A stretch of DNA of 46,062 nucleotides, taken from the NCBI RefSeq assembly GCF_001194135.2, contig NC_068981.1, positions 180,225,444-180,271,505 of the forward strand, read 5' to 3'. Below the pieces are notes generated by a model. That model was not told where the DNA came from. It saw nothing but the letters and a program-made list of their open reading frames with translations, and made no database searches. The position numbers and the translations under genes were made by a program. Shown here one piece after another: positions 39,328-44,725 of this stretch. The stretch's first letter is position 1, and every line of letters starts with the position of its first letter. Source of the stretch: Octopus bimaculoides. Taxonomy: Eukaryota.

Positions 39328-40209
39328 AGTTACTGTTAGTTACTGTGAATAATCCTTATTTAAGTAACTTCAAATTTGGTTACTTCTAAAAAACTAGTAT
39401 TATTTTGATATACATTATTATAGCCTAACTCTATATCTATGGGGTAATATAGAAGGTTGTAATTATTGTAGCTCTAAGTTTCTCTTCATATTTCTTACGG
39501 AATTCGCCCTCCGATAAACTACGTAAATAAACAATATTTTTTCTTAGCTACTCTAAAACAATTTTTATATCAATAACTTTAAGTAAAAGATAAGAGATGT
39601 TATATATTACCAATATAATATATTCTCATTTATATTTATAAACACATTTTATTACCGTCTCTACATTAAGTAAGACCCTGATACTTAATTTATATACTTA
39701 TATATTGTAATGGTATGTTATTAAAATAGCCAGATATTGTTTTCGACCTAAACGAATTTAGATTAATATTATTTAATTGTAGATTGTAGATAATTGTAGA
39801 TTCTCTTTACTTAATTATTTTGTCCGTTATAGTTTTGTTGTTTTTTTTTTAATTGTAATTGTTATGTAGTTGAAAGATTAACGCTCACGCTCCTCATCAT
39901 ACTCATGTGAATTAATTTTTTGGCAACCCAGCCGTCCTTTCACACGGAATTTCGTCTGTGTTTTAAACCAAAGCTCTGAAGAAACTGATATAAATGGATA
40001 TGAATTGTTTATAATTCAAATAATGTATATCAGTCGAAACAAATTGTTGGCTTTGTTGGTTTTTTAAATAATTTTTTAATGTTATCTTATATTATATTAT
40101 ATTCATAGTATATTATTTTATATTATAAATAAATTATTAGATTGTCAATTGAATCTCTCTATTTTTTATTGTTCATATGTATGTGTGTGTGTGTGTGCAT
40201 GTGTGTGTA

Positions 40210-41174: not shown

Positions 41175-42340
41175 TTATAAATAGGGGATATAATCATTAA
41201 AATAATTACATCAGCGGCTAGCCTATAAAAGAACCGCCATATCGGTAAAATTAATTTTTAAGTATATAATTATAAAAATATAATTACAATTAAGGTCTCT
41301 GAAGTGCCAACGCCTATACGCTAGATGTAGCTGTCAAATGTCTACAAGCCATTCTCAATTTCTTTCTCTATTTTGTTAATAATGCAAGGCCAAATGCGTG
41401 GTAATGGGCAAGGAGATTTACAAAAATTTCGGATAACCCTTTATCTTAAGATTTTGTGTTCTGTAATACAAAATTACTTTACACTCTTCAGTAGAGATAC
41501 ATCAACAATATATTAGCGAAAACTACATATACATACCGATAAATTTTTGCGTACAGATGCCAATATATACATGCATTTCCCGCATATATACTATATCTAA
41601 TCGACCATCTCAGCCGTGTGGATAATGTCAGAAATCATGCCGGAGAGAATATAGTACCGCAGCAAAATATAATCACTAGAGAACTCAAAATTATATATAC
41701 TTATAGAGGATATAATTATTAAAATGATTATATCAATGGCCAGCGCATAAAAAAAAGCCACCATATCGGTAAAATTAATTTTAAGTATATTATTATACTC
41801 CAGCGCCCTTAATTATAATTTTATTTTTATAATTATATACTTAAAAATTAATTTTATCAATATGTTGGACTTTTATACGCTAGCCATTGATATAATCATT
41901 TTAATGATTATATCCTCTATTTATAGGCATACATAATTTTGGGTTCTCTAGTTATTATATTTTGCTGCAGTACTATATTCACCCTGGCATGATTTCTGAC
42001 ATTAACGCCATGGCTGACATAGGCGATTAGATATATTGTATATTCGAGAAATGCATGTATATATTGGTATCTGTACGCAGAAATTTATCGGTTTGTATAT
42101 GTATCTTTCGCTTATATATTGTTGGTGTATCTCTACTGAAGAGTGTAAAGTAATTTTGTATTACAGAGCACGAAATCTTAAGATAAAGGGTTATCCGAAA
42201 TTTTTCTATATCTTCTTACCCGTATACATTTTTCTAAATCTTCTTACCCGTATACATTTGACATCTACTTCTAGCATATAGGCGTTGGCACTTCAGCGCC
42301 CTTAATTTTAATTATATTTTTTATAATTATAAATATATAT
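41175..42340. repeat. ~1.1-kb imperfect palindrome built from partial tandem pLTR-like units, flanked by (TA)n
   Basis: Left arm ~41260-41797 vs right arm ~41798-42335. The sub-unit aggatataatcattaaaatgattatatc...ggtaaaattaatttttaagtatataattata occurs at ~41178 (+), ~41703 (+), ~41812 (-) and partially at ~42290 (-). Confidence 0.9.
42131..42190 (+). ncRNA. Type I hammerhead motif in the right arm of the palindrome (decayed twin at 41438-41496, minus)
   Basis: cucua-CUGAAGA-GUGU aaa GUAAU uuugu AUUAC aga GCAC-GAA-AUCUUAAGAU-A-aaggg. Canonical core and 10-nt palindromic stem III, but stem I is weak (A-A at the first pair, then 4 bp). The left copy has GAAA changed to AAAA. Confidence 0.6.
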
Positions 42341-43387: not shown

Positions 43388-44126
43388 NNNNNNNNNNNNN
43401 NNNNNNNNNNNNNNNNNNNNNNNNNNNNNNNNNNNNNNNNNNNNNNNNNNNNNNNNNNNNNNNNNNNNNNNNNNNNNNNNNNNNNNNNNNNNNNNNNNNN
43501 NNNNNNNNNNNNNNNNNNNNNNNNNNNNNNNNNNNNNNNNNNNNNNNNNNNNNNNNNNNNNNNNNNNNNNNNNNNNNNNNNNNNNNNNNNNNNNNNNNNN
43601 NNNNNNNNNNNNNNNNNNNNNNNNNNNNNNNNNNNNNNNNNNNNNNNNNNNNNNNNNNNNNNNNNNNNNNNNNNNNNNNNNNNNNNNNNNNNNNNNNNNN
43701 NNNNNNNNNNNNNNNNNNNNNNNNNNNNNNNNNNNNNNNNNNNNNNNNNNNNNNNNNNNNNNNNNNNNNNNNNNNNNNNNNNNNNNNNNNNNNNNNNNNN
43801 NNNNNNNNNNNNNNNNNNNNNNNNNNNNNNNNNNNNNNNNNNNNNNNNNNNNNNNNNNNNNNNNNNNNNNNNNNNNNNNNNNNNNNNNNNNNNNNNNNNN
43901 NNNNNNNNNNNNNNNNNNNNNNNNNNNNNNNNNNNNNNNNNNNNNNNNNNNNNNNNNNNNNNNNNNNNNNNNNNNNNNNNNNNNNNNNNNNNNNNNNNNN
44001 NNNNNGCATATATACGTACAGGTATGTGCATACCGACATCCACCTGTATGTATAGGTGCATATCTGGGTACAGGACATTGCAAACAAAACGTAGACGAGA
44101 AAACACACAAGCCACATAGAGAACAT

Positions 44127-44185
44127 TCTTCTTCATCAGCTACCCCCGTTTTAATACCGGCGTTTCGAAGAGCTGGGCAGGACGC
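44127..44185 (-). ncRNA. Candidate non-circularly permuted (rearranged) hammerhead ribozyme
   Basis: Minus strand: GCGU-C-CUGCCC-agc-UCUUC-GAA-ACGC-cgguauuaaaacgg-GGGUAG-CUGAUGA-a-GAAGA. Stems III (4 bp), I (6 bp) and II (5 bp) all pair and every core nucleotide is canonical, but strand order is substrate, GAAA, CUGAUGA. Confidence 0.65.
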
Positions 44186-44327
44186 ATCGTTAAAACGGCT
44201 CTTCCTATGGACCGCAAATTAAATTTGTATACACAAATTAAACCTTGCCATGGACGAATGTAGTGGCGGACAAAAAACAAGACAGGAAAACAAACAGAAA
44301 GGCTATATATATATATATACTTTTATA

Positions 44328-44588
44328 TTTTTACTTGTTTCAGTCATTGGAACGTGGCCATGCTGGGGCACGGTCTTGAAGAATTTTAGTTGAATGAATC
44401 GACTCCAGCACACTTTTAATTTTTTAAATCTAGTACATATTCTAATGACTCTTGCCGAACCGCTTGGTTACGGGGACGTAAACACACCAACAGCGGTTGT
44501 CAAGCTTAGGTGGGAACAAACACAGATATACAGTTACTCACGGACGCACACACACACACACACACGTGTATTTATGTATGTATGTATG

Positions 44589-44626
<38 letters not shown>

Positions 44627-44725
44627 CAGAACGGGCTTCTTTCAGTTTCCGTCTACCAAATCCATTCGTAAAGCTTTGGTTGGCCCGAGGCTATAGTAGA
44701 AGGCATTTGCCCAAGGTACCACGCA
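44328..44725 (-). mobile_element. Long SINE, minus strand
   Basis: tttttacttgtttcagtcatt...ggttacggggacgtaaacacacc...gcttctttcagtttccgtctaccaaatcc...ctatagtagaaggcatttgcccaagg. Confidence 0.9.

What the first reader, a model, noticed from the sequence alone, without database searches (positions are those of the whole stretch)
44127..44204. Hammerhead ribozyme with its three strands in a non-circular (pseudoknotted) permutation
Seen: the minus strand reads 5'-GAAGAGC CGUUUUAA cgau GCGU C CUGCCC agc UCUUC GAA ACGC cggua UUAAAACGG GGGUAG CUGAUGA a GAAGA-3'. GCGU/ACGC forms stem III with A15.1-U16.1 and a GUC site (cut between plus 44181 and 44180). CUGCCC/GGGUAG forms a 6-bp stem I abutting C17 and C3. 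UCUUC/GAAGA forms stem II. All of C3-A9 and G12-A15.1 are canonical. Established: types I, II and III are circular permutations of the order substrate - CUGANGA - GAAA. Here the order is substrate - GAAA - CUGANGA, which no circular permutation gives, so standard hammerhead searches would miss it. Inference: the 3-nt linker joins the distal ends of stems I and II, which lie side by side in the active fold, so the topology is plausible. Two extra helices (CCGUUUUAA/UUAAAACGG, 9 bp, extending stem III; GAAGAGC/GCUCUUC, 7 bp, competing with stem II) look incompatible with an active monomer and suggest a conformational switch or trans/dimer cleavage. The motif lies in a ~270-bp repeat starting at a (TA)n tract (~44305). 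I recall rearranged hammerheads being reported in the literature, so novelty of this family must be checked.
Basis: partly seen in the sequence, partly recalled or inferred. Interest (0 to 1): 0.9.

Follow-up and report, generated by a model that had tools for sequence, protein, structure and literature searches.

The report
Orphan permuted (type-SGC) hammerhead candidate
The minus strand at 44127-44204 encodes every core base and all three helices of a hammerhead ribozyme in the non-circular "S-G-C" strand order, a topology already published in 2023; this copy would be the first in an animal genome if it is real, but it is a single copy with no relatives available to test conservation.

Summary
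It has a full hammerhead core, stem I of 6 bp, stem II of 5 bp and stem III of 4 bp, a GUC cleavage site (cut between 44181 and 44180) and a G10.1-C11.1 pair. The strand order is substrate, GAAA, CUGAUGA.

This order is not new. Eckert et al. (NAR 2023, PMC10085705) described and validated it as the "type-SGC" hammerhead, but only in metatranscriptomes. The candidate shares two of that class's hallmarks: a 3-nt linker between the stem I and stem II strands, and an unpaired base after A9. It lacks the helix that closes the CUGAUGA block, which was needed for cleavage in the one ribozyme tested (SGC-3). It is not detected by a covariance model I built from HRIMA-1 sequences. Two strong helices (7 bp and 9 bp) compete with the active fold.

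Composition-matched shuffles, Markov nulls and decoy-core controls make pure chance unlikely: about 1% per window for the bare topology, and none of 539 decoys matched its G-C-rich helices. No second copy exists in the window and no cephalopod sequence could be searched, so covariation is untested. The "~270-bp repeat" was not confirmed.

Verdict: real ribozyme-derived element about 0.5, chance about 0.4. I class it as a new variant of a known kind.

The parts
44198..44204 (-). GAAGAGC, 5' arm of the 7-bp competitor helix. It pairs with GCUCUUC at 44167-44173 and so sequesters the 3' strand of stem II.
   Evidence: Present in the nested MFE and centroid structures. Duplex energy -9.2 kcal/mol, against -3.2 for stem II.
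44190..44198 (-). CCGUUUUAA, 5' arm of the 9-bp helix.
   Evidence: Perfect inverted repeat with 44146-44154 (I7). Seen in 0.3% of shuffles of the 78-mer. However, non-microsatellite inverted repeats of 9 bp or more occur about 0.6-1.2 per kb in the real window.
44182..44185 (-). GCGU, stem III strand 16.4-16.1 (block S).
   Evidence: Pairs with ACGC at 44160-44163, with U16.1 pairing A15.1.
44181..44181 (-). C17. The predicted scissile bond is 3' of this base, between 44181 and 44180.
   Evidence: Position by analogy with the hammerhead consensus; GUC triplet. Cleavage has not been tested.
44175..44180 (-). CUGCCC, stem I strand 1.1-1.6 (block S).
   Evidence: Forms 6 bp with GGGUAG at 44140-44145. 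Duplex energy -8.1 kcal/mol.
44172..44174 (-). AGC, the 3-nt linker joining the distal end of stem I to the distal end of stem II.
   Evidence: Same length as the 2-4 nt linker of published type-SGC ribozymes. An SGC chance hit with a linker of 6 nt or less occurred in 1 of 6000 shuffles.
44167..44171 (-). UCUUC, stem II strand 11.5-11.1 (block G).
   Evidence: Forms 5 bp with GAAGA at 44127-44131, with C11.1 pairing G10.1.
44164..44166 (-). G12 A13 A14, the conserved core bases of block G.
   Evidence: Read directly from the sequence.
44160..44163 (-). ACGC, stem III strand 15.1-15.4 (block G).
44146..44159 (-). CGGUA plus UUAAAACGG, the spacer between block G and block C. Its last 9 nt form the 3' arm of the 9-bp helix. 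In known type-SGC ribozymes this position holds the 5' strand of the closing helix P.
44140..44145 (-). GGGUAG, stem I strand 2.6-2.1 (block C).
44133..44139 (-). CUGAUGA, core bases C3-A9 (block C).
44132..44132 (-). Unpaired A inserted between A9 and G10.1.
   Evidence: HRIMA-1 type-SGC ribozymes have an unpaired U at the same position. Penelope-like-element minimal hammerheads also conserve a nucleotide there (PMC4209133).
44127..44131 (-). GAAGA, stem II strand 10.1-10.5 (block C).
44122..44125 (-). UGUU, the only adjacent candidate for the 3' strand of helix P. It would pair with AACG at 44147-44150.
   Evidence: 4 bp including one G-U. Energy is 0 to -0.7 kcal/mol, so the helix is effectively absent. 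A distal alternative (44085-44091 plus 44067-44071, -8.9 kcal/mol) is no better than 15% of shuffles.

Best explanation
The minus strand encodes a hammerhead ribozyme of the non-circularly permuted type-SGC class, either genuine or decaying, and in a variant form.

Shown from the sequence:
- Block S carries the stem III strand, GUC and the stem I strand.
- A 3-nt linker joins block S to block G, which carries the stem II strand, GAAA and the stem III strand.
- After a 14-nt spacer comes block C, which carries the stem I strand, CUGAUGA, an extra A and the stem II strand.

Inferred from established hammerhead chemistry and from the validated type-SGC ribozymes:
- Stem III forms locally.
- Block C docks onto the S-G hairpin loop through two pseudoknotted helices, stems I and II.
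- The short linker holds stems I and II side by side, in place of the usual loop-loop contact.
- The 2'-OH of C17 then attacks its 3' phosphate, with G12 as general base and G8 as general acid. This cuts between 44181 and 44180 and leaves a 2',3'-cyclic phosphate and a 5'-OH.

This copy differs from the known class. It lacks the fourth helix that closes block C. It also carries a 7-bp and a 9-bp helix that are each incompatible with the active fold. I therefore expect weak or conditional activity in the native context, for example only in transcripts that start 3' of 44198, or only in a co-transcriptional window. Alternatively it may be a relic copy.
For: - The core and all three helices are canonical, including GUC and G10.1-C11.1.
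- Helix strengths (I -8.1, II -3.2, III -3.4 kcal/mol) equal or exceed those of the validated SGC-3 (-2.9, -2.1, -2.9).
- Chance controls: a non-circular hit of at least 15 bp occurs in 0.67% of shuffled windows, and SGC with a short linker in 0.017%.
- Markov nulls at local GC give 0.075-0.19 non-circular hits of at least 15 bp per Mb. With G10.1-C11.1 plus C17 the rate is 0.015 per Mb or less. With at least 9 G-C pairs as well there were 0 hits in 200 Mb.
- Decoy cores on the real sequence gave 0 of 539 hits with helices of this quality. The only other real-motif hit is a bona fide type-I hammerhead at 3375-3460.
- The window is rich in hammerhead-type elements. CUGANGA occurs 29 times in the real orientation against 9 in the reversed sequence.
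- A singleton permuted hammerhead (GCS-1) found by pattern alone did cleave in vitro.
Against: - This is a single copy. There is no second copy in the window and no homologue in metagenome or viral contigs or among predicted proteins. Those collections hold essentially no cephalopod DNA, so this absence is weak evidence.
- Helix P, conserved in the published type-SGC alignments I read and required for cleavage of SGC-3 (mutant M8), is absent.
- A covariance model built from 18 HRIMA-1 sequences does not find the candidate at E<=10.
- The nested MFE uses the 7-bp competitor helix, and its stability is ordinary (z = +0.94).
- Eckert et al. searched RefSeq and report no permuted hammerhead RNA in genomes of known organisms apart from GCS-1.
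- The nulls are simple sequence models, and some of the discriminating features were chosen after seeing the hit.
Confidence: 0.5

Rival explanations
1. Fortuitous match. Neutral, single-copy DNA downstream of a SINE happens to satisfy the minimal permuted-hammerhead consensus. It is not transcribed as a ribozyme and has never been selected as one.
For: - No family, conservation or transcription evidence could be obtained.
- Helix P is absent.
- Two strong competing helices are present, and nested folding is no better than for shuffles.
- At the bare-topology level the chance rate is about 0.08-0.19 per Mb. That gives hundreds of non-circular hits of at least 15 bp in a genome of a few Gb.
- Real sequence holds about ten times more 9-bp inverted repeats than shuffles do, so shuffle-based p-values are optimistic.
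- The published RefSeq search found none with covariation.
Against: Once the standard natural hallmarks are required (G10.1-C11.1, C17, G-C-rich helices, short S-G linker), chance hits vanish from 200 Mb of simulation and from 539 decoys. By extrapolation, about one such site or fewer is expected per genome.
Confidence: 0.38
2. A regulated conformational switch or dimer. The 7-bp and 9-bp helices would be selected 'off' states, or intermolecular contacts, that gate cleavage.
For: Both helices overlap strands needed for the active fold. The spacer UUAAAACGG can pair either with the 5' flank (-9.0 kcal/mol) or with a downstream CGUUUUG...GUACC (-8.9 kcal/mol) that would mimic helix P. Hammerheads that work only as dimers are known in Penelope-like elements and in newt satellite RNA (PMC4209133).
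Against: The downstream pairing is no better than 15% of shuffles. Helices of 7 bp occur in 9% of shuffles of the 78-mer. In every dimer arrangement I reasoned through, the 9-bp helix still leaves 4-5 nt linkers to span about 50 A (my inference, not computed). No covariation data exist.
Confidence: 0.07
3. Some other element: a C/D-box snoRNA-like RNA, or a DNA-level inverted repeat belonging to a transposon end.
For: Weak Rfam hits to C/D snoRNA models across the UGAUGA (ceN106 at 15.1 bits, sR41 at 10.8 bits, E>1). The segment is bounded by TA-rich tracts like an insertion.
Against: The scores are far below the gathering thresholds, and I saw no D box or terminal stem. There is no tRNA-like head and no similarity to other repeats in the window.
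Confidence: 0.03

Closest known systems
Type-SGC hammerhead ribozymes (HRIMA-1 motif and 'type-SGC variants'), Eckert et al., NAR 2023 (PMC10085705)
   Same: Identical block order S-G-C with two core pseudoknots. All core nucleotides are present. A 2-4 nt linker joins the stem I and stem II strands. There is one unpaired nucleotide between A9 and 10.1. Stems I and II are 5-6 bp, and the cleavage site is predicted by analogy.
   Different: There is no closing helix P between the flanks of block C. There is no sequence similarity (HRIMA-1 has a fixed AUGUU/AACAU stem I), and the covariance model gives no hit. The extra base is A, not U. A 9-bp helix uses the segment where the 5' strand of P should be. 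The candidate is encoded in a eukaryotic DNA genome, whereas the known ones come only from metatranscriptomes of presumed circular-RNA agents. It is a singleton, against 583 sequences with covariation.
GCS-1, the singleton type-GCS hammerhead of Caballeronia peredens (same paper)
   Same: A single genomic sequence that fits a non-circular permutation by pattern alone, with no covariation possible. The evidential status is the same.
   Different: GCS-1 was shown to cleave, partially, in vitro. It has a different block order and comes from a bacterium.
Metazoan type-I hammerheads of Penelope-like elements and retrozymes (Cervera & de la Pena 2014, PMC4209133)
   Same: [quoted passage not shown] They are abundant in invertebrate genomes. 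Several type-I examples lie in this same window (3375-3460, about 39968-40056, and around 41491 and 42136).
   Different: They have the canonical C-G-S order, a very short palindromic helix III and dimeric activity. The candidate has a 4-bp non-palindromic stem III, a permuted order, and no sequence similarity to the type-I copies in the window.
Classical type-III hammerhead
   Same: Read 5' to 3', the candidate is a type-III hammerhead up to the 5' strand of stem II: stem III strand, GUC, stem I, CUGAUGA.
   Different: The third strand (UCUUC-GAAA-CGC) sits inside what would be loop I instead of following stem II. The three-way junction is therefore replaced by pseudoknots.

Membership tests
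Hammerhead ribozyme (any topology) | Conserved core: C3 U4 G5 A6 N7 G8 A9, G12 A13 A14, the A15.1-U16.1 pair, and H17 | tested here: met
   All are present. The triplet is GUC and the G10.1-C11.1 pair is present.
Hammerhead ribozyme (any topology) | Three helices (I, II, III) abutting the core | tested here: met
   6, 5 and 4 bp, of which 9 of 15 are G-C pairs. This rests on a single sequence only.
Hammerhead ribozyme (any topology) | Helices supported by covariation among homologues | not testable with these tools
   No second copy in the window. No homologues in the searchable collections.
Hammerhead ribozyme (any topology) | Site-specific, Mg2+-dependent self-cleavage that is lost in core mutants | not testable with these tools
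   This needs in vitro transcription.
Rfam hammerhead families (types I, II, III, HH9, HH10) | A covariance-model match | tested here: not met
   No hammerhead hit at the gathering threshold or at E<=10 on 44040-44300. This is expected for a non-circular permutation.
Type-SGC hammerhead (topological class) | 5'-to-3' block order S, G, C | tested here: met
   U16.1 is at 44182, G12 at 44166 and C3 at 44139 on the minus strand.
Type-SGC hammerhead (topological class) | A short linker (about 2-4 nt) directly joining the stem I and stem II strands | tested here: met
   AGC at 44172-44174. Compare the published alignments.
Type-SGC hammerhead (topological class) | [quoted passage not shown] | tested here: not met
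   The adjacent option AACG/UGUU scores 0 to -0.7 kcal/mol. The distal option at -8.9 kcal/mol is matched by 15% of shuffles.
HRIMA-1 family (homology) | Detectable by a covariance model of HRIMA-1 sequences, with the conserved AUGUU/AACAU stem I | tested here: not met
   Model R1, built from 18 published sequences, was run with filters off. The candidate is not among the hits at E<=10.
HRIMA-1 / type-SGC variants (context) | Found in metatranscriptomes alongside hairpin ribozymes, in presumed circular RNA replicons | tested here: not met
   The candidate lies in gapped eukaryotic genomic DNA, about 100 nt downstream of a SINE.
Penelope-like-element minimal type-I hammerhead | Type-I (C-G-S) order with a 0-2 bp palindromic helix III, located in a pseudo-LTR | tested here: not met
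   The order is S-G-C and stem III (GCGU/ACGC) is not palindromic. PLE membership of the flanks could not be tested.

The most novel reading that the evidence does not exclude
This is the first DNA-encoded, metazoan member of the non-circularly permuted hammerheads. It would be a variant without helix P whose activity is gated by alternative 7-bp and 9-bp helices. It might represent the 'non-canonical' hammerhead cores reported at the 3' ends of Naiad-type Penelope-like elements. Those elements insert into (TA)n tracts and survive only as remnants in cephalopods (PMC8557442).
Probability: 0.25. Interest if true: 0.7.

Novelty: new variant of a known kind. Interest (0 to 1): 0.45.

Why it matters
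Non-circular permutations of a ribozyme are so far known only from uncultured, presumably viroid-like RNAs in metatranscriptomes. A working copy in an animal genome would show that the permuted topology also arises or persists in cellular DNA. The most likely route would be the very abundant hammerhead-bearing retroelements of invertebrates. It would also show that the fourth helix is dispensable when stem I is strong. Finally, it would argue for re-scanning animal genomes with permutation-aware descriptors that do not require that helix. If the site is a chance match, it is a useful calibration point for such searches.

Tried and rejected
1. Rfam, both at gathering thresholds and at E<=10. 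It gave no hammerhead hit at the site. The weak C/D snoRNA hits (E>1) were rejected.
2. A second copy in the window, by blastn with word size 7. None was found, so the '270-bp repeat' is not supported. The block sequences TCTTCGAAA and GTCCTGCCC are also unique.
3. Tandem or internal duplication. An S-like GUCCUG(UA)CCCAG lies 107 nt downstream, and a 24-nt T/G-rich match flanks the motif. Both are too short and of too low complexity, so I rejected them.
4. Fetching relatives through ORF translations of three open frames across the motif. No hits.
5. Exact-word scans. The metagenome 23-mer gave none. The 19-mer gave 9 hits, all in unrelated coding-like contexts. Viral contigs gave none.
6. Sampling cephalopod DNA through a retrotransposon ORF in the window. 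This returned only four homologues on contigs under 1.2 kb, so the collections hold no usable cephalopod genome.
7. A covariance model of HRIMA-1. The candidate was not detected.
8. Searches for helix P, both adjacent and distal. The results were not significant.
9. Homology to the type-I hammerheads in the window. Only an 8-mer (AAGAGCCG) is shared with the 3443 copy, which is within chance.
10. tRNA or SINE head at the site. None.
11. Literature search for later reports of type-SGC ribozymes in animals. None found in the library.

Full report
**Observation**

An independent descriptor script anchors on CUGANGA, GAAA and UH, and extends helices outward from the core. It recovers the same assignment:
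- U16.1 is at 44182 and C17 at 44181.
- Stem I is CUGCCC/GGGUAG (6 bp).
- The linker is AGC.
- Stem II is UCUUC/GAAGA (5 bp).
- G12 is at 44166.
- Stem III is GCGU/ACGC (4 bp).
- C3 is at 44139.
- A single unpaired A (44132) lies between A9 and G10.1.

The predicted scissile bond lies between 44181 and 44180. The 9-bp inverted repeat and the 7-bp helix are also real. One side statement fails. The motif is not in a repeat that recurs in the window. Only the sequence beyond the (TA)n tract recurs, and that is the 3' end of a complete SINE on the minus strand, about 44725-44305.

**Is it more than chance?**

I used three kinds of control.
- Dinucleotide shuffles of the window (6000). Any block order with at least 15 bp occurs in 1.2%. 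A non-circular order with at least 15 bp occurs in 0.67%. SGC with stems of at least 6/5/4 bp occurs in 0.067%. SGC with an S-G linker of 6 nt or less occurs in 0.017%.
- First-order Markov sequence, 200 Mb each, at the GC content of the local 270 nt (43%) and of the motif itself (51%). Non-circular hits of at least 15 bp arise at 0.075 and 0.19 per Mb. With G10.1-C11.1 and C17 the rate is 0.015 per Mb or less. With at least 9 G-C pairs as well there were none.
- Decoy cores on the real window: 539 same-composition permutations of the two core words. Six give a non-circular hit of at least 15 bp, and none gives a hit with at least 9 G-C pairs. The true core words give two such hits: this candidate, and an independent, conventional type-I hammerhead at 3375-3460.

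Chance hits carry G10.1-C11.1 plus C17 in 1.35% of cases, and their helices average 14% G-C pairs against 60% here. At the level of bare topology a genome of a few Gb should hold hundreds of accidental matches. With the usual natural hallmarks added, extrapolation gives about one or fewer. These nulls are simple. Real sequence contains roughly ten times more 9-bp inverted repeats than shuffles do, and some criteria were applied after the fact.

**What it is in terms of known biology**

The topology is not new. Eckert, Friedrich, Weinberg and Weinberg (NAR 2023, PMC10085705) divide the hammerhead into blocks S, G and C. They describe the non-circular 'type-SGC' permutation (the HRIMA-1 motif with 407 sequences, plus 176 variants). 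They show cleavage at the predicted site, loss of cleavage in a G5 mutant, and rescue by compensatory mutations in four helices.

Their alignments show these features:
- a 2-4 nt linker between the stem I and stem II strands;
- an unpaired U after A9;
- a spacer of 0-44 nt after block G;
- a 4-11 bp helix, here called P, that pairs the two flanks of block C.

They state that, apart from a type-GCS singleton in a bacterium, none of their RNAs was found in genomes of known organisms. I found no later report of type-SGC ribozymes in animals.

**Comparison with the known class**

The candidate shares the block order, the full core, the 3-nt linker, the extra base after A9 and comparable helix lengths. 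Its stems are as strong as, or stronger than, those of the validated SGC-3. It differs in four respects.
- Helix P is effectively absent. The only adjacent option is AACG/UGUU at about 0 kcal/mol. A distal pairing at -8.9 kcal/mol is matched by 15% of shuffles.
- A covariance model built from 18 published HRIMA-1 sequences does not detect it at E<=10 with filters off. It is therefore not a homologue of that family.
- The 9-bp helix occupies the segment where the 5' strand of P should be. Its 3' strand continues with no linker into the distal end of stem I. Whether it stacks on stem III or on stem I, linkers of 4-5 nt would have to span roughly 50 A. I therefore infer that it cannot coexist with the active fold, in cis or in the dimers I considered.
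- The 7-bp helix GAAGAGC/GCUCUUC (-9.2 kcal/mol) outcompetes stem II (-3.2 kcal/mol) and appears in the nested MFE. The stability of that MFE is ordinary (z = +0.94).

A transcript that includes 44198-44204 is thus predicted to sit mostly in inactive folds.

**Context**

The window is gapped, AT-rich eukaryotic DNA full of (TA)n tracts and SINE copies. From my own recollection of the octopus SINE consensus, it is from an octopus, but no tool here confirmed the organism. The window is rich in hammerhead-type elements:
- a type-I motif at 3375-3460 (Rfam HH9, 20.4 bits, local E = 0.006), with the palindromic helix III typical of Penelope-like-element hammerheads (PMC4209133);
- a further type-I-like motif at about 39968-40056, which Rfam did not detect;
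- a roughly 1-kb inverted repeat at 41300-42295 whose arms each carry a hammerhead-like core.

CUGANGA occurs 29 times in the real orientation against 9 in the reversed sequence. This raises the prior that the candidate is hammerhead-derived. It shares no sequence with those copies, however, and simple tandem duplication of a type-I unit cannot produce the S-G-C order.

**Search for relatives**

All attempts failed, for an uninformative reason.
- Translated-ORF searches across the motif found nothing.
- Exact-word scans of metagenome and viral contigs found nothing related.
- A retrotransposon ORF from the window has only four homologues, on contigs under 1.2 kb, in the protein collection. Cephalopod genomes are therefore not in the searchable data.

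Covariation, the criterion that Eckert et al. required, remains untested.

**Verdict**

The interpretation as a new topology does not stand, because this is the published type-SGC permutation. I put about 0.5 on a genuine ribozyme or ribozyme-derived element, in the form of a variant without helix P that is probably weak, conditional or decaying. I put about 0.38 on a fortuitous match. The remainder is split between a selected switch or dimer and some other element. If real, it would be the first permuted hammerhead in an animal genome. An untested idea is that such motifs account for the 'non-canonical hammerhead cores' noted at the ends of Naiad-type Penelope-like elements, which target (TA)n and persist as remnants in cephalopods (PMC8557442). 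The decisive tests are a cephalopod-wide homology and covariation analysis and an in vitro cleavage assay.

Noticed in passing
window 3375-3460 (minus strand): A conventional type-I hammerhead: AGCCG-CUGAUGA, a long stem II, then GAAAUCGCGAU-A-CGGCU. It has an extended, interrupted stem I and a palindromic helix III, as in hammerheads of Penelope-like elements. The Rfam HH9 score is 20.4 bits (local E = 0.006), below the gathering threshold, so default annotation misses it.
   Followed up: partly
window ~39968-40056 (plus strand): A type-I hammerhead-like motif: CAAAGCU-CUGAAGA, a 9-bp stem II, then GAAAC-AAAUU-GUU-GGCUUUG. Helix III is 2 bp and there is an A-C mismatch at 10.1/11.1. No Rfam hammerhead model finds it.
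   Followed up: partly
window 41300-41780 and 41844-42295: An inverted repeat of about 1 kb (arms 89-94% complementary). Each arm carries a hammerhead-like core, CUGAAGA...GAAAUCUUAAGAU-A, at 41491 (minus) and 42136 (plus). This resembles the inverted partial copies described for Penelope-like elements.
   Followed up: partly
window ~44305-44725 (minus strand); also 4129-4251, 26056-26117, 1445-1490: A full-length SINE with internal (TA)n/(TG)n tracts and a tail followed by (TA)8. It ends about 100 nt upstream of the candidate. Diverged copies lie elsewhere in the window. It matches my recollection of the common octopus SINE, but I did not verify this with a tool.
   Followed up: partly
window 8794-9210 (plus strand): An ORF with a zf-RVT domain (Pfam PF13966, E = 3.6e-4), which is a fragment of a non-LTR retrotransposon. 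It has only four homologues, all on very short contigs, in the large protein collection.
   Followed up: yes
whole window: CTGATGA occurs 15 times against 5.7 expected from shuffles. CTGANGA occurs 29 times in the real orientation against 9 in the reversed sequence. Part of the excess comes from (ATG)n-like tracts and part from hammerhead-type motifs.
   Followed up: partly
window, 11 runs of N (e.g. 43388-44005): Most of the assembly gaps I looked at are flanked by (TA)n or (TG)n microsatellites. The gap 120 nt downstream of the candidate hides whatever follows it on the minus strand.
   Followed up: no
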